The notes under the pieces were generated by a model. The model saw only the letters and a program-made list of their open reading frames with translations. It made no database searches and was not told the DNA's origin. From positions 112,413-176,412 of the forward strand of contig NIVC01000248.1 in assembly GCA_002269645.1 (NCBI GenBank): 64,000 nucleotides of DNA, given 5' to 3'. Source of the stretch: Macrostomum lignano. Its lineage: Eukaryota. Below are positions 1 to 36,096 of the stretch, piece after piece; the stretch's first letter is position 1, and every line of letters begins with the position of its first letter. The translations under genes were made by a program, and so were the position numbers.

Positions 1-195
1 AAGACCAACCCGGAGGTGTGCGAGTACGTCATGGAGGGCGGCGTGCTGGAGAAGCCCCGCCTCTGTCCGGAGCAGCAGGTGTACATCTACGTCATGCTGG
101 AGTGCTGGAAGGCCAGCCCGGTTGAACGGCCAACGTTCAGCGCCATCGTGGCCAAGTTTGACACCCTGCTGGAGAGCAGCAATGCTCTGCACTGA
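1..195 (+). CDS. Receptor tyrosine kinase, C-terminal end of kinase domain (insulin receptor/ROS/ALK-like superfamily); 5' part lies outside the window
   Basis: Frame 1 translates KTNPEVCEYVMEGGVLEKPRLCPEQQVYIYVMLECWKASPVERPTFSAIVAKFDTLLESSNALH*. It contains the PTK subdomain X-XI signature (N.EV..YV..GG.L..P..CP ... CW...P..RPTF). TGA at 193-195; GC3-rich codons. Confidence 0.88.
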   Translation, partial: KTNPEVCEYVMEGGVLEKPRLCPEQQVYIYVMLECWKASPVERPTFSAIVAKFDTLLESSNALH

Positions 196-261: not shown

Positions 262-630
262 GGATTATCAGGCTATTGGGAGATTCTTCCCCGTGATTTT
301 GTATCTCAATAATCTGATAATCTCACTGGGGAGAAATCCCCCAATATCCTGATAATCCCATTTGGGAAGAATCCTAATAGCCTGATAATCCCATTTGGGA
401 ATAATCTCCCAATAGCTCGCTAATCCCACTAGGGAATAATCTCCCAATAGTCCGCTAATCCCACTAGGGAATAATCTCTCAATAGCCTGATATTCCCATT
501 TGGGAATAATCTCCCAATAGCCCGCTAAACCCACTAGGGAATAATCTCCCAATAGTCCGCTAATCCCACTAGGGAATAATCTCCCAATAGCCTGATAATC
601 CCATGGGTGAAGAATCTCCCAATAATCTGA
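262..630. repeat. ~35-37 bp minisatellite with one inverted unit (foldback) just downstream of the RTK stop
   Basis: Units like gggaataatctcccaatagcctgataatcccattt at ~315-630. Positions 262-291 are the reverse complement of 572-601 (29/30 match). Confidence 0.8.
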
Positions 631-1324
631 GGATCTCGTGGGAGTGTTCGAGCACCTGATGAAGGAAGCTGGCAGCTGCTCAGTAGCCTACCTGAGTGAT
701 GCTCAGTGTCGCGAATCTCACGCTAGTTCAGTATTTTGATTGTTTTGCCCTCAATGATTTATTGTGGTCCATCCGATGTGCTGGAGAATCTGCCAGCATC
801 CGACTGAGGACCCGGGGCCGGTGCCTCCCTTTGTTTGCCGCCTCTGCCCCCCCCCCCGTCTTTCCCAACTCTCGCCGCTTCGCTTCGCTTCCTGATTAAA
901 GCTGAGGGTGCTAAAAACTTCCTGTGTCCACTTGCCGCTTTGGGTATACTACTTGTAGTAGCAGAAAGTATGCAGAATTTATAACAGAATACAATGTGTT
1001 TTTCTAAATATAATTTTTTATCTTGCAAATCTTTTTAACGTAGACTCTTGAGGATGTACGGCTAAAATGCTTTATTTTGTTATCTGTAGACACGCCTCGC
1101 TGTATTATATATTGTAGCTTGTGTGTCCAGCGCTGTTCAGACCCCGTGTGTAATGAATATTTCGGTGAAACAGTAAGCTAATGTTTTTGCTAGTTTTATT
1201 TATATACCTGTTAATTTTTTTCTGATTTCGAAAATTCACTCAAATCCTATCCTTATCAGATCTCAATACTCGGACTTTGAGTCCCAGATGTGCTAGAATG
1301 TTGAACCTTGAACCCCTAAAATCC

Positions 1325-2185
1325 CTGATCCTGAACCCTTTGAGTCCCAGATACTGGACCCTTTGAGTCCCAGATCCTGAACCCTTTGAGTCCCAGATCC
1401 TGAACCCTTTGAGTTCCAGATCCTGAACCCTTTGAGTTCCAGATCCTGAACCCTTTGAGTCCCAGATCCTGAACCCTTTGAGTCCCAGATCCTGGACCCT
1501 TTGAGTCCCAGATCCTGAACCCTTTGAGTCCCAGATCCTGAACCCTTTGAGTCCCAGATCCTGAACCCTTTGAGTCCCAGATCCTGAACCCTTTGAGTCC
1601 CAGATCCTGAACCCTTTGAGTCCCAGATCCTGAACCCTTTGAGCCCCAGATCCTGAACCCTTTGAGTCCCAGATCCTTAACTCTAAATCCCAGATACTGA
1701 ACCCTTTGAGTCCCAGATCCTGAACTCTAAATCCCAGATACTGAATCCTTTGAATCCCAGATCCTGAACCCTTTGAATCCCAGATCCTGAACCCTTTGAA
1801 TCCCAGATCCTGAACTCTAGATTCCAGATACTGAACCCTTTGAATCCCAGATCCTGGACCCTTTGAATCCCAGATCCTGAACTCTAAATCCCATATCCTG
1901 AACTCTAGATCCCAGATACTGAATCCTTTGAATCCCAGATCCTGAACTCTGGATCCCAGATACTGAATCCTTTGAATCCCAGATCCTGAACTCTAGATTC
2001 CAGATACTGAACCCTTTGAATCCCAGATCCTGGACCCTTTGAATCCCAGATCCTGAACTCTAAATCCCATATCCTGAACTCTAGATCCCAGATACTGAAT
2101 CCTTTGAATCCCAGATCCTGAACTCTGGATCCCAGATACTGAATCCTTTGAATCCCAGATCCTGAACTCTAGATTCCAGATCATG
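1325..2185. repeat. 23/21-bp minisatellite
   Basis: Unit gatcctgaaccctttgagtccca (23 bp) grading into gatcctgaactctaaatccca (21 bp) variants. Confidence 0.95.
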
Positions 2186-2671
2186 AAGTCTAGATCTCAA
2201 GTCATGAACCCAGATCATGCACTTTATATTCAGCTTTAAATTCACACTGGTTCATTTTTCAAAATTATCAAGCAGTAATTTCAGTCCTACATGTGAAATT
2301 TGTCCATAAAGCTTGCGTCTTAACCATCTGTTTCGCCTTCTCATAATTAGTTTTATTAGCCCGCTACTGGCAATCGTAGTGTACTTCACACTGCATTCAC
2401 CATCGCTGTTCACCATCTAGCTCATTCTTTGCTGTTGTCTAGCTTTTTAAAGCGCTTCTATTTTCACAATCCCAGTTGCATTCTGCTCTGCTTGCGTCCC
2501 GTCTTCCTCTTTGAAAAAGCAAAATTTTTCTCAAGTTGGGTCAGTTTTGTTCAACCTGCTGCTGAGTTTTCTTACCACATTTTGCCAATTTCCATTCATC
2601 AGCTTTGAGTCTCCTTAACTTAATTGTCGTTTGTTCAATCTGCTTGGATGCAGTTCACTTGGCCTGTCGCT

Positions 2672-3955
2672 GAGTCGCCCTTGCCCCTCGGGTCATTCCT
2701 GAGAATCGCCCTTGCCCCTCGGGTCATTCCTGAGAATCGCCCTTGCCCCTCGGGTCATTCCTGAGAATTGCCCTTGCCCCTCGGGTCATTACTGAGAATC
2801 GCCCTTGCCCGTCGGGTCATTCCTGAGAATCGCCCTTGCCCCTCGGGTCATTCTCACAGACGCCCCTATGCCATCTGTGAGAATCGCCCCTATGCCATGT
2901 GTGAGAATCGCCCCTATGCCATCTGTGAGAATCGCCCCTATGCCATGTGTGAGAATCGCCCCTATGCCATCTGTGAGAATCGCCCCTATGCCATGTGTGA
3001 GAATCGCCCCTATGCCATCTGTGAGAATCGCCCCTATGCCATGTGTGAGAATCGCCCCTATGCCATCTGTGAGAATCGCCCCTATGCCATGTGTGAGAAT
3101 CGCCCCTATGCCATCTGTGAGAATCGCCCCTATGCCATCTGTGAGAATCGCCCCTATGCCATGTGTGAGAATCGCCCCTATGCCATCTGTGAGAATCGCC
3201 CCTATGCCATCTGTGAGAATCGCCCCTATGCCATGTGTGAGAATCGCCCCTATGCCATCTGTGAGAATCGCCCCTATGCCATGTGTGAGAATCGCCCCTA
3301 TGCCATCTGTGAGAATCGCCCCTATGCCATCTGTGAGAATCGCCCCTATGCCATCTGTGAGAATCGCCCCTATGCCATGTGTGAGAATCGCCCCTATGCC
3401 ATCTGTGAGAATCGCCCCTATGCCATCTGTGAGAATCGCCCCTATGCCATCTGTGAGAATCGCCCCTATGCCATCTGTGAGAATCGCCCCTATGCCATCT
3501 GTGAGAATCGCCCCTATGCCATCTGTGAGAATCGCCCCTATGCCATCTGTGAGAATCGCCCCTATGCCATCTGTGAGAATCGCCCCTATGCCATCTGTGA
3601 GAATCGCCCCTATGCCATCTGTGAGAATCGCCCCTATGCCATCTGTGAGAATCGCCCCTATGCCATCTGTTAGAATCGCCCCTATGCCATCTGTGAGAAT
3701 CGCCCCTATGCCATCTGTTAGAATCGCCCCTATGCCATCTGTGAGAATCGCCCCTATGCCATGTGTGAGAATCGCCCCTATGCCATCTGTGAGAATCGCC
3801 CCTATGCCATCTGTGAGAATCGCCCCTATGCCATGTGTGAGAATCGCCCCTATGCCATCTGTGGGAATCGCCCCTATGCCATGTGTGAGAATCGCCCCTA
3901 TGCCATCTGTGAGAATCGCCCCTATGCCATCTGTGAGAATCGCCCCTATGGTGTG
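2672..3955. repeat. Compound minisatellite: 31-bp unit (~5x) then 24-bp unit (~45x)
   Basis: gagaatcgcccttgcccctcgggtcattcct, then gagaatcgcccctatgccatctgt/gagaatcgcccctatgccatgtgt. Explains the CENRPYAI and VRIAPMPS ORFs. Confidence 0.97.
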
Positions 3956-5393
3956 AGAATCACCCTTAGACCGTTTCTTAAATTCGACCTTAATTTCGGT
4001 ATTATGTATCAGCTTAGGCTAATGAGATGCAGTATGTAGCAATGCTATTGCTAACGCATACTAACTGACATTGCATGAAATTGCTTATTTATAAATTATG
4101 CTTTGACTCAAATTAAACAGTCTCGCGGTAGACTTCGATTTAGTATTTGTGTATATTTAACTTGCTATCGATTTATATCCACTTATTTTGTACACAAGTT
4201 TCGAATATTATTTATAATTGTGCTCTATACTACACTATAGTAATTCTTCCGTGCAAGAATATTGAAAAGGCTTTCAAAAGCTGCCAAACAAGCAACTGCC
4301 ACACCTGGCATTGTGCATGGCTTTGTTACGAACTGATTTAATCCACCTGGATTGTAACTGCCTTGCCTTATTAAATCTCCGCTTTCATATAATTTAATAC
4401 AGCAGTGACTTTGTTGCAGACAGATACACGCTAATTAAACAAATTTCGCACCAATTTTCAGGGTCGCAGTTGCCCATGCGTACATGTAGAGAGAGAAAGG
4501 CCGAAGTACAGAGTGCACGTCTGAACGTGTACATTGCTAGTGTAAACCCCGCCTCAAGTGGGCTTTCCCTGGAATTGCCGGCCAGGGCAAGGAGGACCGT
4601 ACATGTATACATGTAGATGCTCGACTAAAAAGCTGCTTTTGTCAGTGCGCATACATGAAGTTAGCAATATATGATGTGCATTTAGTAGCAGAAAAAATGC
4701 ATCTACAACTACAAGCCACACAATAGAAATTATAAATGCACAGTTTGAATTTACAATTGCATATACGCTATTGTGTTGCATTTCAGTCTGTCTTTGCCTG
4801 GAATTCTGCAGCTCGCGCTGCCTTTGATGGCTAGTGTTTTAATGTGACTTGTGGAAGCAGAAGCATACTAAACTGCTTATTTCCAAGTTGATGTATAGAG
4901 CCTATGCACAATACAAGCGGTTAAAGCATCAAGCCGGTGAAATTGTCTGAATAAAAAGACAGAGGCAGCAAGCTGCCTTCCCCTTATCTGCCTGACCATA
5001 AAAAACTACTGAGAACAGAAGGCAAGAGAAACAAGCTACTTTCCATTCCATGTGTACACTTGAGCGTTAATGCTATGTAATGCTGCTCTTTGACTTTGGC
5101 TGGGGTTGTTGAGGTGGGATAGGCTGCTATACTATTAGAAACTTGAAAAGACAGAATGGTTTGGGGGTTAACGTACATAGTGGCAAGTGTACGCACAGCC
5201 TGCTAGCTATTTGGATTGCCCACGGAATTCCCATGGAGTTTTCTCGGTATGGCCATCTGGCTTAATCGATAGCAGTTGTTGCCTTGGCTACTAGGTCTTA
5301 GGAAATGGAGTTTGTATTATTTTAATTAATATCAAAATATACTAAATACAATTACTAAGTGTTATTTGGAGTGTTGAGCATTAATTGTTATCC

Positions 5394-6314
5394 ATGTCTA
5401 AACAGACTGAAGGTCTGATTATAGCAGGCTCCTCCAAACAAAACGAGAACTTGGCGGAGCCGTTTATTGCCACTGTTGACGAGACAGATGTAGAATTACT
5501 GGATATTCTGAAGATTAAGTCCAAGCACAAGCCCTACCATACGATAATGCGTATCTTGTTGTTCGTCTGGCCTTGTAAGTTGAAACAAGATGTGACTGCA
5601 CGGCTGAGTGAATTAAGGCAGCTGAGAAGTGATGAACAGCGATCAGCGCTTCTAACTGAAAGTCCGCCTACAAAGCTGATTTGGAAGAACCTGAACGTGG
5701 AGACTTACTATTCGTACGTCAATCGGCACAAAAGCTACGTTAAAAGGGGCTTCGAAGTCTTTAATGACTTAGTCATCTCTGCAGTAAAGCCCAGACTACA
5801 CCAAGAAGGCCGCCTACTCCCCGAGTACCGCCCAGAGCAAGATCCCACTGAGGAGCAGATCGATGAGCATGATGACAGCAAGTACAGCTTTGTAGAGACT
5901 GTCACCTACGCCATGAAATGGTATCCCAATCCCTGCTTAGATGGGAGCAAGTGCGACGATGACGCCTGGGAGACTGGCCTGCACCATCACTATTGCCACA
6001 ACGAACACCACCCAGAGCACTGGGGTAACAAGCCAATGTATTGGCGCTTTATTGTGGAGGCTCTGTATGACATGGCAGCCATGGAATTGGAGAAAAAGTT
6101 CAAAGGCCAGGAGCCAGACAGCAAAGCAATGTTGCTGCAGTTTGATCCACAGTTTCTGAGGCGGTTTAAAGAGACTGGTCAGTTGGAGTTTATTGAGAAG
6201 ATCATCGAGTATACAATTGAAGCCTATTGCAGACTCAATAAGCTGCCTATTCCAGCAGCACCAGCACCAGAAGCAGCAGCAGTGCCAGCAAGATCCACTA
6301 AGCCTTCTTTTTAG
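5394..6314 (+). CDS. Intronless HD-like putative metal-dependent phosphohydrolase, DUF5662-type (306 aa)
   Basis: Open frame from ATG 5394 to TAG 6312-6314; AATAAA at 6361-6366. Motifs RHKSYV, HDDSKYSFVE, AW...LHHHYCHNEHHPEHW, M....IVEALYDMAA match the His/Asp pattern I recall for DUF5662 (HD.SK.S..E ... HH...N.HHPE.W ... M...E...D..A). Family assignment is from memory, not a search. Confidence 0.75.
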   Translation: MSKQTEGLIIAGSSKQNENLAEPFIATVDETDVELLDILKIKSKHKPYHTIMRILLFVWPCKLKQDVTARLSELRQLRSDEQRSALLTESPPTKLIWKNLNVETYYSYVNRHKSYVKRGFEVFNDLVISAVKPRLHQEGRLLPEYRPEQDPTEEQIDEHDDSKYSFVETVTYAMKWYPNPCLDGSKCDDDAWETGLHHHYCHNEHHPEHWGNKPMYWRFIVEALYDMAAMELEKKFKGQEPDSKAMLLQFDPQFLRRFKETGQLEFIEKIIEYTIEAYCRLNKLPIPAAPAPEAAAVPARSTKPSF

Positions 6315-7964
6315 CTTTCTTTAAGTTAGTCCAAGTTGATTCACTCAGTATCCAGTCCTCAATAAACTTAGTCTCAATAGCTAGTTCAATTAGGCCTATA
6401 AAATTGACACTTGATTTTTTTTTAACTTTAAGTATCATAGACTACTTCTATATTTTATACAGTTAGTAAGCCTACTTGATTTATAATACTGATATATGTT
6501 TTACACTATTGCAGTATTGGTTTTACATTGTGATTAAATAGCTAAGCATGAAATATATCATATCTAGTATCTAAGTTTTGTAATAACATTGCTCTATAAA
6601 TATATATAGTCATATATGAGTGAGTATAAATGGACTTTTGTATTTTTAATTAATGTATATTTCTGGGCTACAATTTAATTTCCCAGATAGGCAGCTTGAG
6701 ATCACTAAAGCCATTAAAAATAATCTAATTCATCATCTCTGTTATTTAATTATAATTTTTGATACTACTCAATTGGAGCCTTCAGAGTTTTCTCATCAAG
6801 AAAAGATAAAGAATAATTTAAATGAATTAACAATAATACCATTTTCTATCTGTTTAAATACAATTTATGTTAAATTTTGTCTCCAACTTTGCCAATTTTT
6901 AGAACTGTATTTCCTAACAATAAATCTGCTTGTAAAAAAACTAGAAATTAAAGTACATTTTTACATTTCTTCATTTTCTGCCTTGATTTATTTAAGTGTG
7001 TCTACCAGTATAAATGGTATTTAATAAATGAAATATAATTTTCATTTTTTGCTGTTAAATAAGTATGTTTGTGCCTGGTGCCTAAAAAATCTTTTGTTTA
7101 ATCTATATAATCTGGTTTCTTAGTATGCATTTTAGTATTATGTGTGATTGTGTAGTCTAACAGCATAAAAATTTCTAAATCTTATTGGATAAAATGAGTC
7201 ATCTTATAATTTTGCCATAATTGCTTATTAAATTGAATGACAATTTTAATACTTTAAATAGTGCTCATTATATTCATTTCTCTTGTTTAAGTTGTAAGTT
7301 TTCATTATTCAGTTTGCTTCATGCTGTGCATAATTATATATGTCATTGAAAATGCTGTTTTCCTTCATTATCAATCATAATCCTTAGTCTAACATTGGCT
7401 CTCCTATCTTTATCTTTGACTCTGTGAATAATATACATAAACTCATTATTAATTTTCTGGAGCCAAATATTGAGAAACTGGTTTCCTAAGCTGACAATTT
7501 TTGTGATTTTTTTATTTTTGAGGACAAATAAGTCTGGTGACTGGTTTTGAAAGTATCCATTTTAAGTGCTGTTCAGCTACTGCACCAACCGCTCTCAATG
7601 ATCCCATAATTGATGGGCCAAAAATAACCAAGCCAAGACTTCAGCATCAATCTGTTTTAGTTTAGCAATAAGTGAATAGTTCAAGAATATTTATGAATGG
7701 CAAAAATATTACATTTATTAGTCTCACCAAAGCGTTACTGCATCAAATGTACTGGGACATGCAGCAGAGCCACTTATGAATAAAAAACAATGCATTAAGT
7801 AACCATCAGACTAAACATACAGACAGGAGGAATATTCATCAATAAACTGATTTTGGCTAATCACAGCAATAAATCCGACTACATTAACAACGCATTCAGC
7901 ACAGGTAGGAAAGCCGGCATCCGATAGGGTGAATCATGTAATGAAACCGTGGTAATCAAGCGAC

Positions 7965-8125
7965 TAATACATATGTCAAGTATACATAATGTATGTATAC
8001 TAATACATACATGTATGTGATGTATGCATAATGTATACATACTGATACATATCATGTTTGCATAATGTATTATACTAATACATATGTCAAGTATACATAA
8101 TGTATACATACTAATGTATGTCATG
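7965..8125. repeat. Degenerate AT-rich tandem repeat (atgtatacatactaatacat-like)
   Basis: Recurring gtatacataatgtatacatactaatacata segments. Confidence 0.7.
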
Positions 8126-8621
8126 TGAACCGAACCCCAAGCCCAGGAGAAAGAATAGGGAGCAGGCAGCAGCGCACCTTAGTGGAATAAAAATGGTTAA
8201 TAATTCTCATGAAGCATGCCAATATAAGGTAAGAATACGCAAGATCAGAAAACTGGCACGGTCAAATTACGGGCTCTTTCATCGGCAAATGCGACAAGGC
8301 CAAAAGACGGGTGTCTTTGGAGAACGAGGCGGAGGTTTCGCATTATGAACTCAGGGAGCAAGGAACGATCGAGAGATCTGCACGTACGAGCGTACAACTT
8401 AAAATCCCTTAGGATCCGTTTCTGATCCCAAATTCGACAAGATCCTCAACCAGTAAACTCAAATCTTAGATCCTCATCTCGAATCCCTACAGTGCACCCC
8501 AAATCTGAGACCTTAATCACAGATACCAAATCTGAGATCCCCAATCGCAGATCCTAAATCTTAAATTCCCAAGTTCATAGATCCCAAATCCCCGATCCGC
8601 TCCGCTCTCCTGTCCAGCTGT

Positions 8622-15206
<6,585 letters not shown>

Positions 15207-17114: not shown

Positions 17115-19505
17115 AAAAAATCATAGAAGCGTCATGTAAAAAATCATAGAAGCGTCATGTAAAAAATCGTGGAAGTGTCATGTAAAAAATCGTGGAAGCA
17201 TCATGTAAAAAGCATAGAAGTGTCATGTAAAAAATCATAGAAGCGTCATGTAGAGAATCATAGAAGCGTCATGTACACAATCATAGAAGCGTCATGTAAA
17301 AAATCGTAGAAGCGTCATGTAAAAAATCATAGAAACGTCATGCAAACAATCATTGAAGCGTCATGTAAAAAATCATAGAAGCGTCATGTAAAAAATCATA
17401 GAAGCGTCATGTAAAAAATCGTAGAAGCGTCATGTAAACAATCATAGAAGCGTCATGTACACAATCATAGAAGCTTCATGTAAAAAATCATAGAAGTATC
17501 ATGTAAAAATCATAGAAGCGTCATGTAAAAAGCATAGAAGCGTCATGTAAAAAATCATAGAAGCGTCATGTAAAAAATCGTAAAAGCGTCATATAAACAA
17601 TCATAGAAGCGTCATTTAAAAAATCATAGAAGCGTCAGATAAATATCAAAAAACGTCATTTAAAAAATCATAGAAGCGTCATGTAAACAATCATAGAAGC
17701 GTCATGTAAAAAATCATAGAAGCGTCATGTAAAAAATCATAGAAGCGTCATGTAGAGAATCAAAGAAGCGTCATGTAAACAATCATAGAAGCGTCATGTA
17801 AAAAATCATAGAAGCGTCATGTAGAGAATCATAGAAGCGTCATGTAAACAATCATAGAATCGTCATGTAAAAAAATCATAGAAGCGTCATGTAAACAATC
17901 ATGAAAGCGTCATGTAAAAAATCATAGAAGCGTCATGTAAAAAATCATAGAAGTGCCATGTAAACAATCATAGAAGTGCCATGTAAACAATCATAGAAGC
18001 GTCATGTAAAAAATCATAGAAACGTCATGTAAACAATCATAGAAGCGTCATGTAAACAATCATGAAAGCGTCATGTAAACAATCATAGAAGCGTCATGTA
18101 AAAAATCATAGAAGCGCCGTGTAAACAATCATAGAAGCGTCATGTAAACAATCATAGAAGCGTCATGTAAACAATCATAGAAGCGTCATGTAAACAATCA
18201 TAGAAGTGTCATGTAAAAAATCATAGAAGCGTCATGTAGAGAATCATAGAAGCGTCATGTAAACAATCATAGAATCGTCATGTAAAAAAATCATAGAAGC
18301 GTCATGTAAACAATCCTGAAAGCGTCATGTAAAAAATCATAGAAGCGTCATGTAAAAAATCATAGAAGTGCCATGTAAACAATCATAGAAGTGCCATGTA
18401 AACAATCATAGAAGTGCCATGTAAACAATCATAGAAGTGCCATGTAAAAAATCGTGGAAGTGTCATGTAAAAAATCGTGGAAGCATCATGTAAAAAGCAT
18501 AGAAGTGTCATGTAAAAAATCATAGAAGCGTCATGTAGAGAATCATAGAAGCGTCATGTACACAATCATAGAAGCGTCATGTAAAAAATCGTAGAAGCGT
18601 CATGTAAAAAATCATAGAAACGTCATGCAAACAATCATTGAAGCGTCATGTAAAAAATCATAGAAGCGTCATGTAAAAAATCATAGAAGCGTCATGTAAA
18701 AAATCGTAGAAGCGTCATGTAAACAATCATAGAAGCGTCATGTACACAATCATAGAAGCTTCATGTAAAAAATCATAGAAGTATCATGTAAAAATCATAG
18801 AAGCGTCATGTAAAAAGCATAGAAGCGTCATGTAAAAAATCATAGAAGCGTCATGTAAAAAATCATAGAAGCGTCATGTAGAGAATCAAAGAAGCGTCAT
18901 GTAAACAATCATAGAAGCGTCATGTAAAAAATCATAGAAGCGTCATGTAGAGAATCATAGAAGCGTCATGTAAACAATCATAGAATCGTCATGTAAAAAA
19001 ATCATAGAAGCGTCATGTAAACAATCATGAAAGCGTCATGTAAAAAATCATAGAAGCGTCATGTAAAAAATCATAGAAGTGCCATGTAAACAATCATAGA
19101 AGTGCCATGTAAACAATCATAGAAGCGTCATGTAAAAAATCATAGAAGCGTCATGTAAAAAAATCATAGAAGCGTCATGTAAACAATCATGAAAGCGTCA
19201 TGTAAAAAATCATAGAAGCGTCATGTAAAAAATCATAGAAGTGCCATGTAAACAATCATAGAAGCGTCATGTAAAAAATCATAGAAACGTCATGTAAACA
19301 ATCATAGAAGCGTCATGTAAACAATCATGAAAGCGTCATGTAAACAATCATAGAAGCGTCATGTAAAAAATCATAGAAGCGCCGTGTAAACAATCATAGA
19401 AGCGTCATGTAAACAATCATAGAAGCGTCATGTAAACAATCATAGAAGCGTCATGTAAACAATCATGAAAGCGTCATGTAAAAAATCATGAAAGCGTCAT
19501 GTAAA
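17115..19505. repeat. 23-bp satellite array (~2.4 kb) with internal higher-order duplication
   Basis: Unit tcatagaagcgtcatgtaaaaaa. The diagnostic variant series starting at 17167 recurs at 18452 (offset 1285). Confidence 0.97.
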
Positions 19506-19589
19506 AAAATCTTACTGACATCAAAAATCAAGTGACAATAAAAAATGTCAGACATGAAAGAAGTGTCATGTAAAAATTAAATGAGGCTA

Positions 19590-24870: not shown

Positions 24871-25431
24871 ATATTTATTGTATGAAACGAAATTAGGCAT
24901 TTAAATAAATTTCTATGAATTTTATTTGCTTAATGATCCTCCTACTCTTAGTAGTACTTGACTGAAAGCTTCCTATCTATGATATTTTCACTGGAGATCT
25001 CTAGTTCTACTTTATACGTCCTTGACACGTCGCACTCGTAAATAAATTTAATGGGCTTTTTGCATAGCGTCTGCATTTCCATTTCCTGGTGCTGTCTGCA
25101 TGTTAAAAAATAAAAAAACTGACTTTGTGTGCTGTCGCTAAACGTGAAACTTCCTGCCTAGCTGGCTCGGTTCTGAAAATAAATATTTGCAGAAACTTTA
25201 GTAGTCTGCAATGTGTGACTGCCTGTCAAAGTGTATCATACAATTACTAGAACAAGTCACATGTAAAATGCATGTATGCCGACTGTGAGAATTATGCTTT
25301 GCATTGTGTTGCTTTATTTGCATTTCTGGATAGCTTCGTATTGGTTAGCCACGTGCATTGTAATGGCATATACTATATTACCAATAGGCAAATGCTGTTA
25401 GTCTCGCCGTCACAAATCCTTGCTTATGAAC

Positions 25432-27125
25432 ATTCATGATGTGAAGATTCATGATTGTGAACATTCATGCTTGAGAAGATTCATGATTGTGAAGATTCAT
25501 GATTGTGAAGATTTATGCCTGTAAAGATTAATGATATGAACATTCATGATGTGAAGATACATGATGTGAAGATTCATGCTTGTGAAGATTCATGCTTGTG
25601 AAGATTCATGCTTGAGAATATTCATGATTGTGAAGATTCATGATTGTGAAGAATATTGCTTGTGAAGATTCATGTTCGAAAAGATTAATGATTGTGAAGA
25701 TTCATGCTTGTGAAGATTCATGCTTGAGAATATTCATGATTGTGAAGATTCATGCTTGTGAAGATTCATGCTTGTGAAGATTCATGCTTGAGAATATTCA
25801 TGATTGTGAAGATTCATGATTGTGAAGAATAATGCTTGTGAAGATTCATGTTCGAAAAGATTAATGATTGTGAAGATTCATGCTTGTGAAGATTCATGCT
25901 TGAGAATATTCATGATTGTGAAGATTCATGCTTGTGAAGATTCGTGCTTGTGAAGATTCATGATTGTGAAGATTTATGCCTGTGAAGATTCATGATATGA
26001 AGATTACGATCATGCTTTAGAATATTCATGATTGTGAAGATTCATGCTTGTGAAGATTCATGCTTGAGAATATTCATGATTGTGAAGATTCATGCTTGTG
26101 AAGATTCATGATTGTGAAGATACATGATGTGAAGATTCACGCTTGTGAAGATTCATGCTTGTGAATATTCATGCTTGTGAAGATTCATGCTTGTGAAGAT
26201 TCATGCTTGAGAATATTCATGATTGTGAAGATTCATGCTTGTGAAGATTCATAATTGTGAAGATACATGCTTGAGAATATTCATGCTTGTGAATATTCAT
26301 GCTTGTGAAGATTCATGCTTGTGAAGATTCATGCTTGAGAATATTCATGATTGTGAAGATTCATGCTTGTGAAGATTCATGCTTGTGAAGATTCATACTT
26401 GAGAAGATTCATGATTGTGAAGATTTATGCCTGTAAAGATTAATGATATGAAGATTCATGTTTGTGAAGATTCATGATTGTGAAGATTCATGTTCGAAAA
26501 GATTAATGATTGTGAAGATTCATGCTTGTGAAGATTCATGCTTGTGAAGATTCATGCTTGTGAAGATTCATGCTTGTGAAGATTCATGCTTGTGAAGATT
26601 CATGCTTGAGAATATTCATGATTGTGAAGATACATGATTGTGAAGAATAATGATTGTGAAGATTCATGCTTGTGAAGATTCATGCTTGTGAAGATTCATG
26701 CTTGTGAAGAATCATGCTTGTGAAGATTCATGCTTGAGAATATTCATGATTGTGAAGATTCATGCTTGTGAAGATTCGTGCTTGTGAAGATTCATGATTG
26801 TGAAGATTTATGCCTGTGAAGATTCATGATATGAAGATTACGATCATGCTTTAGAATATTCATGATTGTGAAGATTCATGCTTGTGAAGATTCATGATTG
26901 TGAAGATACATGATGTGAAGATTCACGCTTGTGAAGATTCATGCTTGTGAATATTCATGCTTGTGAAGATTCATGCTTGTGAAGATTCATGCTTGAGAAT
27001 ATTCATGATTGTGAAGATTCATGCTTGTGAAGATTCATGATTGTGAAGATACATGATGTGAAGATTCACGCTTGTGAAGATTCATGCTTGTGAATATTCA
27101 TGCTTGTGAAGATCCATAATTGTGA
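25432..27125. repeat. 16-bp satellite array (~1.7 kb)
   Basis: Unit aagattcatgcttgtg with recurring variants; a marker block at 25971 recurs at 26805. Confidence 0.96.
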
Positions 27126-28050
27126 AGATTATTGTTTTTGAAAAATTCATGCCAGCCTCGATGATTGGCAAATGTTTTTCTGCTTCAAATCTTGCTGTAG
27201 AATTAGGGTTAAAGTTAAGGTTAGAGATAAGGTTATAAAGGTTTGGGTTAGTCTCGGCAGCCAATAACGTAGACCCACTTTTTGCCCGTGCTTAGTTCAA
27301 ATCTTCTTACAGGTAGCTTCGGAGCACCTGTAGAACGTCCTGAAAATTTGTCGAGTTGACTGGCAGAAAACCCAAAAAACAAATTTCCTTTCCTTTAGTG
27401 AGGATTCTGCAACTTTCTCAGCAATTGTAAGAATTTTTGTGCTTAGATTTGACAAAAGGATTTACTGAATGTTTGGAATTTAATTCTGCGCAAGCTGAAA
27501 GCCTTGTACAAATCAATGTCAGGCTTGGCTTGCGTGATTGTAAAGTGACAGCTTGAGTAAAGAATGGGTGCCGAGAAGGACCAACTGGCCCAGGCGAAAG
27601 CTCCAGTCTCTTGCCATTCAAACAAAGGCCGCATGATTGCATCAATTATTTAAAGACTTCCGAAGAAAAATTTCCGCAAAAAAAACCTACCACTAACCTC
27701 TTATAGCAGGCCCGCAAAGTACCTCTTCTCATTCAGCGTCTGCTCTACAGAATCCTTCAGTGACCACACAGCATATCCTCTCTCCCACATCGCTCGCTTC
27801 TTCTCGCCCCCTCCCTTCCAGAAAAGAGCCTTACCGATGCCTCTCGCTGGTTGGTCCAATGCAAATTTGCTCCTCAAAATTCCTTTCCGCTTCACTGTAG
27901 CCCGTGGCAACCTATTTAAATTCTGCAACTTTCCATAATTCTGCAACAATTCTGCAAAGTGCAAAGCAGGAAAGAACAATAATCAACAGAAATAATCTTA
28001 CTTCAAACCAGTGCCGATCTGACAGTAGTCATTGTTCAAGTCAAAAAAGC

Positions 28051-31576: not shown

Positions 31577-34500
31577 TCAATCGCAGATTTTCCTCTGCTT
31601 ATCGGTGATGCAAGTCTCGCACTTGACGTCGCAGCACCACACGAATCGACAGTTGCACTTTTTGTCCACGTGCTTGTAGTGCTCGATCCTGTAGGTGCCC
31701 GAGCAGCAGATACTGCTGCAGCTGCCATTGTTAATGCTGCACACCCGCTGGTGCACGCCCGGCAGGCTCCAGACGTGGTTGGGCTCGCAGAAGAAATCCT
31801 CGCTCACAGATTCGTAGTAGACCAGGTCCCGCCGACGCGGAAGGCTGCCGGGCTGCTGCGGCGAGCGGCCAGCTTTCACCAGGTTCAGCCGGCGACGTCG
31901 GCGTCTTCGCTGTCGCTGGCCTCGGCGACGCTTGTGACGTTGCTGACGAAGCTGCTGAGATGATCGGCCTCCTCGACGAGACTTGCGAGACTGCAGATCC
32001 TGGTCCAGGTAGATCTTCACCGGACTGGCTGTTTTGTTACAAAACAATTTTCAGTTTCTGGTTCGTTTTATGAGACCTTAAAAGTGAACTTTATTCAATT
32101 ATACGCTCGTTAGTCCCTCACCTTGCTCCACCTTGACAGCTTCTTTGTACTGATACTTCAAAAATTCGCCGATTTTTTGAAAGCTGGCCACCTCGCGCCA
32201 GCAGATGTTATGCGTGCAGCTGCCGCTGGTGCCGTGACAGACGCATTTTACTTCCATCGTGCGAACCACCGCCTGCAATTTTAAGTTGGCGATCAAATTT
32301 GTTTGCGCACTACGAAGTGGGCCTGAAGCAACACACCAACAAAATATGCTATGGCTAGTTGGTTAAAGAAGACGACGTCACAGAGAACGCCTCAAGACTT
32401 TGGCGCGAACTTGTCCAGCTGTTGACGAGCTCTTCGATGGCCGAGACAGCGACGCGAGGTCGTCAGCGCAGCCAAGCACTCAAGCCGCCTCTCTGGTTGG
32501 CTTAAGCCCACGAAGCCCGATAGGCTGTTTAGCGTCAACAAAGCAACGCTAAACATCGCCACGATTAGAGCAGTTTATTTAAGAAAACTCCCGAATAAAG
32601 TGGCATTTAGAAAAACATATGATGATGAATAATTTCACGGCACCTCTTGAACCTTCCCTCAATGCCACTAACGATTTAGTTATACCTATAGCAACTGGTA
32701 TCGTTGACCCATCGAAGGAAAAAACATTAGCAAGCAAGACAACAAAATCAACCAAGACGCTGAATTTGTGGATCTCTTCAAGAGACTTGGATGCCAACGA
32801 AAGACGATTATTTTTCGCGCGAACCTGCAGCTGCTGCGTGTGAAATCTTTTTGAACAAATGTGGCCTTCCAGCTGGAATTCTGTGGTGCTGTGTCTGTAA
32901 ATCAATAGCCACCTGTGCTGCAAGTTAAGCAGAGTTGGCTATGGTTAGTACAGACATAAATCCCTGGAACAACCACCGCGCTGCGATAGGAATTACAGCG
33001 TCAGAGTTGCGACCCCCACAATGTCAGCACTGCACAAGCACCGTAACCTCAACCCTCAGATGTTTCGGATCTCCCTACTTAAGCCAATAAAAAGTCACCC
33101 AGGCTTTACCCTCCGTCCAGCGTTGAAGTTGTGCAGCATGGCCAGGTGGCGCACATCGCGGCCGCTCTCTGGCCGGTCCAGCAGTTTGCGGCTTATCGCA
33201 CCGGCGAAGCGCACGTTGTGGTCGCAGCCGGCGTATCTGGCCGCGGCCGGGGAAGCAGCCGATCGTAGCGGCGACAGGCCGCGTTCCGGGTCGTCTTGAG
33301 TCACCCGACAGGGGCAGCAGCGCAGCGACCGGCGACACTCTGAGGCGATGGACGCGGTGACACCTGCCGACACTATGGCCAGGGCGAAGGCGGTCTCCGG
33401 GATGCCTGTGGCAGTTTCGGCGAGGGAAATCATTTAGTTTCCAGAATGGTTCCAGAATGGTTCCAGAATGGTTCCAGAATGGTTCCAGAATGGTTCCAGA
33501 ATGGTTCCAGAATGGTTCCAGAATGGTTCCAGAATGGTTCCAGAATGGTTCCAGAATGGTTCCAGAATGGTTCCAGAATGGTTCCAGAATGGTTCCAGAA
33601 TGGTTCCAGAATGGTTCCAGAATGGTTCCAGAATGGTTCCAGAATGGTTCCAGAATGGTTCCAGAATGGTTCCAGAATGGTTCCAGAATGGTTCCAGAAT
33701 GGTTCCAGAATGGTTCCAGAATGGTTCCAGAATGGTTCCAGAATGGTTCCAGAATGGTTCCAGAATGGTTCCAGAATGGTTCCAGAATGGTTCCAGAATG
33801 GTTCCAGAATGGTTCCAGAATGGTTCCAGAATGGTTCCAGAATGGTTCCAGAATGGTTCCAGAATGGTTCCAGAATGGTTCCAGAATGGTTCCAGAATGG
33901 TTCCAGAATGGTTCCAGAATGGTTCCAGAATGGTTCCAGAATGGTTCCAGAATGGTTCCAGAATGGTTCCAGAATGGTTCCAGAATGGTTCCAGAATGGT
34001 TCCAGAATGGTTCCAGAATGGTTCCAGAATGGTTCCAGAATGGTTCCAGAATGGTTCCAGAATGGTTCCAGAATGGTTCCAGAATGGTTCCAGAATGGTT
34101 CCAGAATGGTTCCAGAATGGTTCCAGAATGGTTCCAGAATGGTTCCAGAATGGTTCCAGAATGGTTCCAGAATGGTTCCAGAATGGTTCCAGAATGGTTC
34201 CAGAATGGTTCCAGAATGGTTCCAGAATGGTTCCAGAATGGTTCCAGAATGGTTCCAGAATGGTTCCAGAATGGTTCCAGAATGGTTCCAGAATGGTTCC
34301 AGAATGGTTCCAGAATGGTTCCAGAATGGTTCCAGAATGGTTCCAGAATGGTTCCAGAATGGTTCCAGAATGGTTCCAGAATGGTTCCAGAATGGTTCCA
34401 GAATGGTTCCAGAATGGTTCCAGAATGGTTCCAGAATGGTTCCAGAATGGTTCCAGAATGGTTCCAGAATGGTTCCAGAATGGTTCCAGAATGGTTCCAG

Positions 34501-36096
34501 AATGGTTCCAGAATGGTTCCAGAATGGTTCCAGAATGGTTCCAGAATGGTTCCAGAATGGTTCCAGAATGGTTCCAGAATGGTTCCAGAATGGTTCCAGA
34601 ATGGTTCCAGAATGGTTCCAGAATGGTTCCAGAACAGAACCCTTTTTCAACAGCTGGCCGAAGATGTTTCCCGCCTCTGCCCTGTAGTTCTGGGTAGCCG
34701 GGAGCAGTTCCACCGCTCCGTGCTCATCTGTCGCTCGCACTCGTGCAACGCCAAGTTGACGCCCTGCAGCGCCGCTCGGATCGCGGCCGGATCGAAGCCG
34801 CAGCGCCTGGCGGAGAAGGTCGCCCACTGCTGCCGGGTGAAGTGGCTCCTGGCCTTGAACAGGTCGAAGTCAGGCCTAAGATAAGCCTCGTGCAGCGACC
34901 TGCGTGTTTCAGTTGAGGCTGGAATTTTTGTCTTTGCGGGTACTTTTTAATATAAATAGGAGTACTAGTACTTTGCGAAGCATTAAATCAAAAATTCGAT
35001 GAGTCCCAAACCGATGAGTCCCAAACCGATGAGTCCCAAACCGATGAGTCCCAAACCGATGAGTCCCAAACCGATGAGTCCCAAACCGATGAGTCCCAAA
35101 CCGATACATAGATACCTAGATACCTACCGACAAACCATTTTTAGTGTATTGGATGTTGAAAATTAACTATAATGCAGCAATCAAATTGGAGACCATGCAA
35201 TCAGGCGCGAGCTACAACTGAGCAGGATTCACTTTAAATGCAAATTTCAAAGTTTGCCAATCAAGACGAAGCAGAAATTAAAGCAGAGGTCGGGCAACTC
35301 AACTGCGACAGAACTGAATCTTTCCGAGGCTCCGCATGAAGCAGATTGAGATCATTACTGAGCGCTATAATTGCCCTCGAGGCTTAGAGCTACAGATTGC
35401 GGCAAAGGCACTATTTATTTCGAAATTTAATGAGCCCTCAAATTTGTGCACAAACTTTGACCAAATTTGCTTTCGCATGTAGCGATGAGTTCTAGCGCTG
35501 AGAAAAGGCATCGCGACAGAATTGCAAGTTAAAACTGAACCTGGACAGGTTTGATTCTTAATATGTCGCTTTAAAGGCAAGGTTAATTTGGGAATGGACA
35601 GATTAGCAAGCAGTTATGGAGGTCAGGCTTCAAGAGTGAATTACTCATAGGACCAAGGCCTCAAGAGTGAATTACTCATAGGACCAAGGCCTCAAGAGTG
35701 AATTACTCATAGGACCAAGGCCTCAAGAGTGAATTACTCAGATTGTCAATGCCTCAAAGGAACTGTTCGGATGACTAAGTACTCAAGGGAACTGCTCAGA
35801 TGACTAAGTACTCAAGGGAACTGCTCAGATGGCCAAGGCTCATTCATAACGTCATCAAGAGCCATCAAACCACACCACTAATGTACAAGCTTCATTTGAT
35901 GTCGATGTGATCGGGCCTTTTTAAAAGCAACTCACCACCATCGAGTGCCTTTCAGGTGCACATCGACTGATGTCGGATGCAGACTGCCGCCACCGATCAG
36001 CGCTGCTGACTGTGCAGCGGAGGGGTGGGAGGCATCAGCTGCGAAGCGAACCAACAGAAGGACGAGCAGCAGCAGTCGAAGGTTTGATCGGTTCAT
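31577..36096 (-). CDS. WNT: Wnt family ligand (~439 aa if one missing base is restored); subfamily not assigned
   Basis: Exons (minus): 36096-35936, 34899-34641, 33405-33110, 32272-32122, 32028-31577. Signal peptide; exon 1 ends ..RW|W; ECERQMSTERWNCS, ETAFALAIVSAGV, GCDHNV, HNFNAGR, CVCHGTSGSC...CW, CNCRFVWCCDVKCETC. Exon 2 is 259 nt where 260 is required (frameshift near 34692-34694). Confidence 0.92.
33440..34634. repeat. Perfect 11-bp tandem array (~108 copies) filling Wnt intron 2
   Basis: (ccagaatggtt)n with no visible variant; ORF-track frames run through it for >400 aa. Confidence 0.99.
34998..35105. repeat. 15-bp minisatellite (~7x) in Wnt intron 1
   Basis: Unit gatgagtcccaaacc. 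Confidence 0.95.
35625..35830. repeat. Two short minisatellites (31 bp x~4; 29 bp x~3) in Wnt intron 1
   Basis: aggcctcaagagtgaattactcataggacca and gggaactgctcagatgactaagtactcaa. Confidence 0.85.

What the first reader, a model, noticed from the sequence alone, without database searches (positions are those of the whole stretch)
5394..6314. Intronless prokaryote/virus-type HD-like (DUF5662-pattern) gene embedded in an animal genome
Seen in sequence: a 306-aa intact ORF with a polyA signal 47 nt after the stop, no introns, and lower GC3 than the neighbouring host genes, inside an AT-rich island. The HDxSK / HH..N.HHPE.W / E..D motif set points to a metal-dependent phosphohydrolase fold of a family I recall mainly from bacteria, phages and large DNA viruses. 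Inference: a horizontally acquired or element-borne (Polinton/virus-like) enzyme, possibly acting on nucleotides (antiviral dNTP or modified-base metabolism). An intact frame in an otherwise decayed island suggests selection.
Basis: partly seen in the sequence, partly recalled or inferred. Interest (0 to 1): 0.75.

Follow-up and report, generated by a model that had tools for sequence, protein, structure and literature searches.

The report
Phage/bacterial-type DUF5662 gene domesticated in flatworm
An intact, intronless gene in the flatworm Macrostomum lignano encodes a DUF5662 protein, a family otherwise found in bacteria and their viruses; it is a stably integrated, anciently acquired host gene rather than contamination or mobile-element cargo, and its enzymatic role remains inferred.

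Summary
The ORF is real: window 5394-6314 (+), 306 aa, with AATAAA 47 nt after the stop. It scores 66 bits against Pfam DUF5662 (cutoff 27).

The window is M. lignano contig NIVC01000248.1. The gene lies between a Tec/BTK kinase gene and a Rab5-bind/FYVE gene. Two further ~95% copies lie in the same synteny on other long contigs, matching the three published subgenomes, so contamination is excluded.

No inverted repeats, viral or transposon domains, or dispersed copies surround it, so the Polinton/virus-borne idea is not supported.

DUF5662 is large (3,429 clusters) and sits in gut Clostridia/Bacteroidales MAGs and large phages. The flatworm proteins and four environmental lineages form a separate clade (100/100 bootstrap) sharing a ~100-aa N-terminal extension.

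Between lineages pN is well below a saturated pS. Among the three copies dN/dS is ~0.8-1.2, though indels avoid the CDS.

The invariant H...HD...H...HH...D pattern matches dinuclear HD-type phosphodiesterases. However, Foldseek, Pfam, the PDB profile search and hhalign do not confirm HD-superfamily membership.

Verdict: an ancient horizontal acquisition, a new member of a known kind; function is probably a metal-dependent phosphoesterase, unproven.

The parts
5394..6314 (+). Complete intronless CDS (306 aa plus TAG) of the M. lignano DUF5662 gene, the third copy of the Mlig027342 group
   Evidence: ORF and sequence. The exact protein is found on NIVC01000248.1. Pfam PF18907 scores 66.1 bits.
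5394..5693 (+). N-terminal extension (aa 1-100), helical and specific to the eukaryote-type clade
   Evidence: It is shared by all eukaryote-type sequences and absent from prokaryote-type ones. hhalign homology to prokaryotic members covers only aa 104-231. AF2 pLDDT is 71-95 over aa 21-100.
5700..6122 (+). DUF5662 core domain (aa 103-243, Pfam match)
   Evidence: The invariant residues are listed.
5727..5729 (+). H112, first invariant His of the H...HD...H...HH...D pattern
   Evidence: Invariant in 98 sequences. Motif definition from PMC8177086.
5868..5873 (+). H159-D160, the HD dyad (within EHDDSKY)
   Evidence: Invariant. Read directly from the sequence.
5988..6011 (+). H199...N203-E-H205-H206, the His cluster (followed by PEHW)
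   Evidence: H199, N203, H205, H206, P207 and W210 are invariant in 98 sequences.
6069..6071 (+). D226, the terminal invariant Asp of the pattern
   Evidence: Invariant.
6249..6311 (+). Pro/Ala-rich C-terminal tail (aa 286-306), predicted disordered and specific to M. lignano
   Evidence: pLDDT is below 50 at aa 296-306. The tail is absent from other lineages.
6361..6366 (+). AATAAA polyadenylation signal
   Evidence: Conserved in all three copies.
1..195 (+). End of the last coding exon (with stop) of the upstream neighbour, a Tec/BTK-family tyrosine kinase gene
   Evidence: Translation. Kinase and SH2 exons lie upstream in L001. PH-BTK-SH3-SH2-kinase gene models are called at the two other loci.
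307..3950 (.). Minisatellite arrays filling most of the upstream intergenic interval. The 24-mer array at 2861-3950 carries a doubtful 271-aa gene model.
   Evidence: Gene model at L001 7475-8576, with no Pfam hit.
8622..15206 (-). Downstream neighbour, a Rab5-bind/FYVE gene convergent with the DUF5662 gene
   Evidence: L001 13229-19813, converted to window coordinates. The same neighbour is present at both other loci.

Best explanation
This is a host nuclear gene of Macrostomum lignano that descends from a single ancient horizontal acquisition of a bacterial or phage DUF5662 gene.

After acquisition the gene gained a ~100-aa helical N-terminal extension and eukaryotic 3' signals. It was later triplicated with its chromosomal neighbourhood (Tec/BTK kinase - DUF5662 - Rab5-bind/FYVE) when the three M. 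lignano subgenomes arose.

Shown here: family membership, genomic integration, synteny of the three copies, monophyly of the eukaryote-type clade, long-term amino-acid constraint, and transcript-derived gene models.

Inferred: the protein is an all-alpha metalloenzyme. Its seven invariant residues (H112, H159-D160, H199, H205-H206, D226) would ligate a dinuclear metal centre that activates water to cleave a phosphoester bond of a nucleotide-derived substrate, as in HD-type phosphodiesterases. The substrate is unknown.

My confidence in the acquisition and domestication part is about 0.85. My confidence in the phosphoesterase mechanism is about 0.5. The overall figure given is for the statement as a whole.
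For: Family: Pfam DUF5662 at 66 bits against a cutoff of 27. hhalign to prokaryotic members gives 97-98% probability.

Integration: the exact protein is on a 176-kb contig of GCA_002269645.1. Copies about 95% identical are on 180-kb and 312-kb contigs with the same two neighbours. The locus is colinear at ~95% including non-coding DNA. Three subgenomes are published (PMC10733133).

Origin: 3,429 representative clusters match the profile, almost all 160-220 aa. Members occur in Clostridia and Bacteroidales MAGs, in 14 IMG/VR contigs, and in large phage contigs in SNF2-helicase/NrdD neighbourhoods or between T4-type gp13 and portal genes. Only M. lignano carries a eukaryote name among the listed hits. 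The eukaryote-type clade has 100/100 NJ bootstrap support.

Constraint: between lineages pS is 0.75-0.90 (saturated) and pN is 0.23-0.45. All family-invariant residues are kept in every eukaryote-type sequence. Between copies, gap columns make up 0.65% of the CDS (a single in-frame indel), against 6.4% and 2.8% of the flanks.

Expression (indirect): Mlig_3_7 gene models are built from RNA-seq, and the shared name prefix reflects 95% transcript clusters (PMC5730564; names). AATAAA is conserved.

Mechanism: the invariant pattern equals the 'H...HD...H...HH...D' pattern of HD phosphodiesterases (PMC8177086). The model is confident and all-alpha (pLDDT 82.6). The best natural Foldseek hits of the core are PDE4D and the PA4781 HD-GYP domain. 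Bacterial and phage relatives are fused to DHH/DHHA1 phosphoesterase domains.
Against: - No significant fold match: best E is 0.7-1.1 and TM is at most 0.32.
- No HD-clan family appears even below threshold in 95 members.
- The profile search of PDB sequences found nothing.
- hhalign against E. coli YfbR gives 0.3-2.5% probability and does not align the HD dyads. That test had low power, since the target was a single sequence.
- H199 lies only 6 residues before H205-H206, whereas PgpH has 24 residues between the equivalent ligands.
- Among the three M. lignano copies dN/dS is 0.78-1.18, and CDS identity (97.8%) equals flank identity (97.1-97.9%). Present-day constraint is therefore not demonstrated by substitutions.
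- No expression table examined lists the gene.
- No stable prokaryotic sister group was found, so the donor is unknown.
- The organisms behind the four other eukaryote-type lineages are unidentified.
Confidence: 0.65

Rival explanations
1. The gene is cargo of a Polinton/Maverick, another virus-like element or a transposon, now decayed around it.
For: The gene is intronless and of prokaryotic or viral type, and its flanks are AT-rich. The family does occur in phages.
Against: There are no inverted repeats in 3900-8600. Five flank ORFs and 42 six-frame segments gave no viral or transposon Pfam domain. The region has no second copy in the window. All three genomic copies are syntenic homeologues between the same host genes, not dispersed insertions. 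The viruses that carry the family are bacteriophages, not eukaryotic viruses.
Confidence: 0.04
2. The gene is bacterial or phage contamination, or a chimeric assembly.
For: The family is prokaryotic. One close relative is labelled 'Kangiellaceae bacterium MAG'.
Against: There are three independent long contigs with metazoan neighbours on both sides, and the non-coding flanks are colinear. The polyadenylation signal is conserved. The 'MAG' contig is 1.16 kb long, carries (TA)n and (GA)n microsatellites, and comes from a coastal brackish microbial mat, so it is most likely a mis-binned eukaryotic contig.
Confidence: 0.01
3. The gene is an old eukaryotic gene inherited vertically and lost almost everywhere, rather than a horizontal acquisition.
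For: The eukaryote clade is internally deep (37-47% identity) and very distant from all prokaryotic members (mean distance 2.06, against 1.40 among prokaryotes). No prokaryotic sister was identified.
Against: Only five eukaryote-type lineages appear, against thousands of prokaryotic and phage clusters, in a 15-billion-protein collection that includes NCBI and UniRef. No other named eukaryote appears among the listed hits. The gene has no introns, in a genome that averages about 5 introns per gene (PMC5730564).
Confidence: 0.07
4. In M. lignano the three copies are now functionally redundant or drifting: transcribed relics heading towards pseudogenes, with no current function.
For: dN/dS is 0.78, 1.18 and 0.79 among the copies. 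CDS identity equals flank identity. One copy has a variant C-terminal tail. The gene is absent from the differential-expression and germline/neoblast tables examined.
Against: All three frames are intact, with every invariant residue kept. Indels are 4-10 times rarer in the CDS than in the flanks, and the internal one is in frame. There are only 20-35 substitutions per pair, so the dN/dS test has little power.
Confidence: 0.15
5. The protein acts on nucleic-acid ends or polymers, as a nuclease or end-processing phosphoesterase, rather than on small nucleotides. Alternatively it is not a hydrolase at all, for example a di-iron oxygenase or a metal-binding regulator.
For: Relatives are fused to RecJ-like DHH/DHHA1 domains (named 'phosphoesterase RecJ-like'). 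The phage copies lie in replication modules with an SNF2 helicase and RecA-like genes. According to PMC8177086, neither chemistry nor substrate can be inferred from the HD motif alone, and dinuclear HD proteins include oxygenases.
Against: There is no positive evidence for nucleic-acid binding. Other phage neighbours are nucleotide or NAD-metabolism genes: thymidylate synthase, a PnuC-like transporter, NrdD and a nucleotidyltransferase.
Confidence: 0.25

Closest known systems
Pfam PF18907 (DUF5662) / PHROG phrog_20637, uncharacterised proteins of gut bacteria and large phages
   Same: The core domain (aa 103-243) scores well above the Pfam threshold. All 15 family-invariant residues are kept, and hhalign probability is 97-98%.
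   Different: The flatworm and related eukaryote-type proteins have a ~100-aa N-terminal helical extension. Their C-terminal third diverges, and M. lignano adds a disordered Pro/Ala tail. They form a separate clade. They are encoded by a chromosomal animal gene with a polyadenylation signal. PHROGs did not detect the flatworm protein directly.
HD-domain phosphodiesterases with dinuclear centres (PgpH, HD-GYP such as PA4781/4R8Z, class I PDEs)
   Same: They share the order of invariant ligand-type residues, H...HD...H...HH...D, including the extra His next to the last His. Both are all-alpha. These enzymes are the top natural, though non-significant, Foldseek hits for the core.
   Different: No significant sequence, profile or structural similarity was found. 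The third His lies 6 rather than about 24 residues before the HH pair. There is no GYP motif. Activity is untested.
Prokaryote-to-animal horizontally transferred enzyme genes (a general class known from bdelloid rotifers, nematodes, arthropods and others; from general knowledge)
   Same: It is a single intronless enzyme gene of prokaryotic type. It is physically linked to host genes, restricted to one lineage, and transcribed using host signals.
   Different: The family has no known function. The nearest carriers found are large gut phages as much as bacteria. The gene predates the M. lignano genome multiplication and has a deep eukaryote-only clade. No paper in the searched library mentions DUF5662.

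Membership tests
DUF5662 (PF18907) | Score above Pfam's gathering threshold | tested here: met
   66.1 bits against a cutoff of 27, E 3.6e-18, aa 103-243.
DUF5662 (PF18907) | Family-invariant residues present | tested here: met
   H112, H159, D160, K163, E168, Y172, H199, N203, H205, H206, P207, W210, M215, D226 and L247 are invariant in a 98-sequence alignment that includes the window protein.
DUF5662 (PF18907) | Profile-level homology to prokaryotic members | tested here: met
   hhalign gives 97.4% and 98.1% probability over aa 104-231.
HD-domain superfamily | Tandem His-Asp dyad shared by all members (PMC8177086) | tested here: met
   H159-D160 is invariant.
HD-domain superfamily (dinuclear phosphodiesterase subclass) | Extended H...HD...H...HH...D ligand pattern | tested here: met
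   H112...H159-D160...H199...H205-H206...D226 are present in that order and invariant. Caveat: the spacing from H199 to the HH pair is 6 residues, not about 24.
HD-domain superfamily | Significant structural similarity to solved HD-domain proteins | tested here: inconclusive
   For the full-length model the best E is 0.9, and the only HD-type entry, 1xx7, is at E = 6. For the core model, PDE4D and the 4r8z HD-GYP domain rank at the top, but at E 0.8-1.1 and TM 0.18-0.32.
HD-domain superfamily | Sequence or profile similarity to recognised HD families | tested here: not met
   No HD-clan Pfam family appears at E <= 10 in 95 members. The PDB profile search found none. hhalign against E. coli YfbR gives 0.3% and 2.5% probability, a low-power test.
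HD-domain superfamily | Invariant residues converge on one metal site; metal-dependent activity | not testable with these tools
Polinton/Maverick or other virus-like or transposable element | Terminal inverted repeats bounding the insert | tested here: not met
   No inverted repeat pairs in 3900-8600.
Polinton/Maverick or other virus-like or transposable element | Hallmark element genes (polymerase, integrase, capsid, ATPase, protease, reverse transcriptase, transposase) adjacent, intact or decayed | tested here: not met
   No Pfam hits in 5 flank ORFs, and only chance-level hits in 42 six-frame segments spanning 3951-8620.
Polinton/Maverick or other virus-like or transposable element | Multiple dispersed, non-syntenic copies | tested here: not met
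   All three copies lie between the same two host genes. There is no second copy in the window.
Horizontally acquired gene in an animal | Physical linkage to bona fide host genes on long contigs | tested here: met
   The Tec/BTK kinase gene ends at window 195. The Rab5-bind/FYVE gene occupies 8622-15206. A polycystin-like gene lies at 56-64 kb. Contigs are 176-312 kb.
Horizontally acquired gene in an animal | Patchy eukaryotic distribution against a large prokaryotic family | tested here: met
   3,429 clusters match the profile, with only five eukaryote-type lineages, which form one clade at 100/100. The donor lineage is unresolved.
Horizontally acquired gene in an animal | Evidence of expression in the host | tested here: inconclusive
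   The gene models are transcript-derived by construction (PMC5730564; names). No read-level data or expression table for this gene was found.

The most novel reading that the evidence does not exclude
The eukaryote-type DUF5662 clade may be a phage-derived dinuclear phosphodiesterase that degrades nucleotide-based immune or second-messenger signals. Flatworms and related meiofauna would have co-opted it, with a new N-terminal regulatory domain, to control their own nucleotide signalling or innate immunity.

The phage side of this idea rests on four observations: fusion to DHH/DHHA1 domains; one locus where the fusion gene lies about 1 kb from a 'Type II Thoeris inhibitor Tad8' gene and near NAD/nucleotide-salvage-type genes; a PnuC-like NMN transporter near another copy; and the HD-phosphodiesterase-type residue pattern.
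Probability: 0.1. Interest if true: 0.7.

Novelty: new member of a known kind. Interest (0 to 1): 0.42.

Why it matters
The gene adds a clean, well-anchored case of a prokaryote- or phage-type gene retained in a flatworm. It has three syntenic copies on long-read contigs and a deep eukaryote-only clade with a lineage-specific added domain. M. lignano is a laboratory model, so expression and structure can be described readily.

It also draws attention to DUF5662 itself. This is a large family (over 3,400 clusters at 50% identity) that no paper in the searched library mentions. It has a seven-residue pattern typical of dinuclear HD phosphodiesterases, and it sits in large-phage nucleotide-metabolism and possibly counter-defence neighbourhoods.

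The significance is moderate. Single-gene acquisitions by invertebrates are a known phenomenon, and the function here is inferred rather than shown.

Tried and rejected
- NCBIfam, PHROGs and PADLOC scans of the flatworm protein found nothing.
- PDB sequence search with the single protein and with a 98-sequence profile gave only chance hits.
- Foldseek of the full-length model against PDB and BFVD, and of the core model against PDB, found nothing at E <= 1e-3.
- A Pfam scan of 95 members at E <= 10, looking for sub-threshold HD families, found none.
- hhalign against E. coli YfbR was negative. An attempt to build a phage YfbR-family profile from IMG/VR found no relatives.
- tblastn of the flatworm protein against GenBank phages found no match. 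A prokaryote-type member as query matched one uncultured phage.
- A second homologue search with the eukaryote-only alignment added nothing. The metagenome scan found only prokaryote-type loci.
- Literature searches for DUF5662, Mlig027342, the SRA and ENA accessions, and 'Tad8' were empty or irrelevant. Only the JGI sample could be traced, to brackish microbial mats.
- The supplements of five M. lignano papers do not list the gene, or are not held as text.
- The script machine was lost, which prevented an HMM search for the N-terminal extension among all fetched proteins. Two hhalign comparisons replaced it.
- Rejected: contamination, a mobile-element origin and 'lower GC3'.
Full report
OBSERVATION

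The window holds an ATG-initiated open frame at 5394-6314 (+): 306 codons plus TAG. An in-frame stop lies 12 nt upstream of the ATG, and AATAAA starts at 6361, 47 nt after the stop. The frame is uninterrupted and aligns end to end with its relatives without intron-like gaps.

Two side claims are not correct. GC3 of the ORF (0.549) falls between the values of two polycystin-gene ORFs in the same window (0.653 and 0.492). The surroundings are not a 'decayed island': they are minisatellite arrays and AT-rich unique DNA without recognisable gene remnants.

IDENTITY OF THE SEQUENCE AND THE LOCUS

The exact protein is encoded on contig NIVC01000248.1 (176 kb) of the Macrostomum lignano assembly GCA_002269645.1.

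Two further copies exist. BOX15_Mlig027342g2 is 304 aa, on a 180-kb contig. BOX15_Mlig027342g1 is 300 aa, on a 312-kb contig. Both are about 95% identical in protein to the window copy.

All three copies lie between the same two host genes:
- Upstream is a Tec/BTK-family tyrosine kinase gene (PH-BTK-SH3-SH2-kinase). Its last coding exon ends at window position 195.
- Downstream is a convergent Rab5-bind/FYVE gene at window 8622-15206.

The window and the g2 locus are colinear at about 95% across the gene and several kilobases of non-coding DNA. This matches the published three-subgenome organisation of this neopolyploid species (PMC10733133). A polycystin-1-like gene (REJ, polycystin and PKD-channel domains) lies at 56-64 kb in the window. 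Contamination and chimeric assembly are therefore excluded.

FAMILY

Pfam DUF5662 (PF18907) matches aa 103-243 at 66.1 bits, against a gathering cutoff of 27.

A profile search of 1.84 billion representative proteins found 3,429 clusters at E <= 1e-3 and 640 at E <= 1e-10. Nearly all are 160-220-aa single-domain proteins.

Members were found in the following places:
- Bacteroidales and Clostridia MAGs.
- 14 IMG/VR viral contigs of up to 220 kb.
- Many gut-metagenome contigs.

The phage version corresponds to phrog_20637, of unknown function. The prokaryote-type members recovered first share one conserved neighbourhood. DUF5662 is followed by a 470-516-aa ORFan, a 102-aa ORF and a 575-aa SNF2-type helicase, with NrdD nearby. 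These sit on 137-220-kb contigs made of same-strand genes, most without Pfam hits, which is the signature of large phages. One 667-aa fusion protein lies between T4-type gp13 and portal genes. Only one GenBank phage record carries the family, an uncultured one from human faeces. No paper in the searched library mentions DUF5662.

A EUKARYOTE-TYPE CLADE

Four other lineages share a ~100-aa N-terminal extension with the M. lignano proteins:
- P0002 (Logan SRR31252258).
- P0003 (SRR31252262 and SRR31252249).
- P0155/P0007 (JGI 3300040801).
- P0009 and relatives (ENA ERZ17091519).

They are 37-47% identical to the window protein.

Their ~1-kb contigs look eukaryotic. They carry (CA)n, (TA)n and (GA)n microsatellites, and AATAAA or ATTAAA signals after the stop.

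NCBI labels P0007 as a protein of a 'Kangiellaceae bacterium' MAG. However, the contig is only 1.16 kb, has microsatellites, and comes from coastal brackish microbial mats (PMC8605020). A mis-binned meiofaunal contig is the likelier explanation.

In a neighbour-joining tree of 129 sequences (162 columns) the eight eukaryote-type sequences are monophyletic in 100 of 100 bootstraps. No prokaryotic group is a stable sister. hhalign shows that homology to prokaryotic members covers only window aa 104-231, so the extension is a clade-specific addition.

NOT ELEMENT-BORNE

- There are no inverted repeats in 3900-8600.
- Five flank ORFs and 42 six-frame segments (>= 35 aa) spanning 3951-8620 show no viral or transposon domain.
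- The region has no second copy in the window.
- The three genomic copies are homeologues, not dispersed insertions.

The Polinton/virus-like hypothesis is not supported.

SELECTION

Among the three M. lignano copies, dN/dS is 0.78, 1.18 and 0.79, on 20-35 differences. CDS identity (97.8%) equals flank identity (97.9% and 97.1%). Substitutions therefore give no evidence of constraint since the duplication, although the power of the test is low.

Indels tell a different story. Between the window and g2, gap columns make up 0.65% of the CDS, as a single in-frame two-codon indel. In the flanks they make up 6.4% and 2.8%.

Between lineages, synonymous sites are saturated (pS 0.75-0.90) while pN is 0.23-0.45. 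Every family-invariant residue is retained in every eukaryote-type sequence. Long-term purifying selection is clear. Present-day constraint in M. lignano is only suggested.

EXPRESSION

The Mlig_3_7 annotation was built entirely from RNA-seq assemblies (StringTie/TACO, with low-expression novel transcripts discarded), and transcripts at least 95% identical share a name prefix (PMC5730564). The existence of the names Mlig027342.g1 and g2 is therefore indirect evidence of transcription. AATAAA and the sequence around the ATG are conserved in all three copies. I found no table listing this gene.

MECHANISM

In a 98-sequence alignment the invariant residues are H112, H159, D160, K163, E168, Y172, H199, N203, H205, H206, P207, W210, M215, D226 and L247.

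According to the HD-superfamily review (PMC8177086):
- All HD proteins share the HD dyad.
- Dinuclear members show H...HD...H...H...D.
- The phosphodiesterase subclass (PgpH, HD-GYP) shows H...HD...H...HH...D.

DUF5662 reproduces the last pattern in order: H112...H159-D160...H199...H205-H206...D226. The third His, however, lies only 6 residues before the HH pair, against 24 in PgpH.

AlphaFold2 gives a confident all-alpha model for the full protein (pLDDT 82.6, pTM 0.79). The N-terminal extension is predicted with high confidence within this single-domain-like model. The core-only model is less confident (pLDDT 75.6).

Independent confirmation of HD membership failed:
- Foldseek found no hit at E <= 1e-3. 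The best natural hits of the core are PDE4D catalytic domains and the PA4781 HD-GYP domain, at E about 1 and TM 0.18-0.32.
- No HD-clan Pfam family appears even below threshold in 95 members.
- A family profile finds nothing in PDB sequences.
- hhalign against E. coli YfbR gives 0.3-2.5% probability.

I therefore treat 'works like a dinuclear HD-type phosphoesterase' as the best inference (about 0.5) and 'is a member of the HD superfamily' as unproven.

FUNCTIONAL CONTEXT IN PROKARYOTES AND PHAGES

- Two relatives are fusions of DUF5662 with DHH and DHHA1 phosphoesterase domains, and others carry tandem DUF5662 domains.
- One such fusion lies in a phage-like contig about 1 kb from a gene matching Pfam 'Type II Thoeris inhibitor Tad8' (56.9 bits). 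Nearby are PRPP-synthetase-like and kinase-nucleotidyltransferase genes.
- Other copies lie near a PnuC-like NMN transporter, a thymidylate synthase and NrdD.
- PADLOC finds no defence-system match.

This points to nucleotide or NAD-related metabolism, possibly counter-defence. The Tad8 adjacency is a single locus and only a lead.

COMPARISON AND NOVELTY

The protein is a member of DUF5662; all tested defining features are met. It represents a eukaryote-specific subfamily with an added N-terminal domain. As a phenomenon it belongs to the known class of prokaryote-to-animal gene acquisitions.

It is unreported in the searched literature, although the M. lignano proteins already sit in public databases with the PF18907 assignment. 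I rate it a new member of a known kind, with moderate interest (0.42).

The most novel reading not excluded is a co-opted phage signal-nucleotide phosphodiesterase in flatworm signalling or immunity (probability about 0.1).

Noticed in passing
L010 1-1160 (JGI 3300040801, contig Ga0450804_3804598; NCBI protein MEE4248734.1): A protein deposited as 'DUF5662 family protein [Kangiellaceae bacterium]' from a MAG sits on a 1.16-kb contig with (TA)n and (GA)n microsatellites. It carries the eukaryote-type N-terminal extension, and the sample is a coastal brackish microbial mat. It is probably a mis-binned meiofaunal (flatworm-like) contig. The NCBI gene call is also N-terminally truncated (218 aa, against 253 aa in the JGI call).
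   Followed up: partly
L107 6503-6820 and 7812-10286 (Logan SRR30832649, 23-kb phage-like contig): A DUF5662-DHH-DHHA1 fusion gene lies about 1 kb from a gene matching Pfam PF25189 'Type II Thoeris inhibitor Tad8' (56.9 bits). It is also near PRPP-synthetase-like, CoaE+cytidylyltransferase-like and RecA-like genes. This may be an anti-defence or NAD-salvage neighbourhood, but it is a single locus.
   Followed up: partly
L101, L102, L103, L104, L105, L013, L014, L019: There is conserved synteny in large gut-phage contigs (137-220 kb). DUF5662 is immediately followed by a 470-516-aa ORFan with no Pfam or PHROG hit, then a 102-aa ORF and a 575-aa SNF2-type helicase, with NrdD further on. The ORFan partner is uncharacterised.
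   Followed up: partly
window 2861-3950 (and L001 7475-8576): A 24-bp minisatellite (45 copies, 97% matches) carries an annotated 271-aa gene model with no Pfam hit. The model is probably spurious.
   Followed up: partly
window 17115-19508, 25421-27130, 33439-34634, 50007-51485: These are very large tandem arrays: 23-mer x104, 16-mer x107, 11-mer x109 at 100% matches, and 23-mer x65. They account for the extreme base-skew values and for long ORFs open in several frames. The perfectly homogeneous 11-mer array is striking.
   Followed up: no
window 56339-57781 and 62753-63997 (- strand): Large exons of a polycystin-1-like gene (REJ, PKD, Polycystin_dom and PKD_channel domains).
   Followed up: partly
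L002 about 4050-4520 (g2 locus, last exon of the Tec/BTK kinase gene): Relative to the window's contig (L001) the reading frame of the last kinase exon appears to shift once in this homeologous copy. This could be a long-read indel error or early decay of one homeologue of the host kinase gene.
   Followed up: no
L012 10001-10903 (g1 copy, P0159): The g1 copy ends with a different, shorter C-terminal tail (300 aa) than the window and g2 copies. The conserved core is unaffected.
   Followed up: partly
P0012 (812 aa), P0013 (938 aa): Some prokaryotic or phage proteins contain two DUF5662 domains in tandem plus several hundred residues of unannotated sequence.
   Followed up: no
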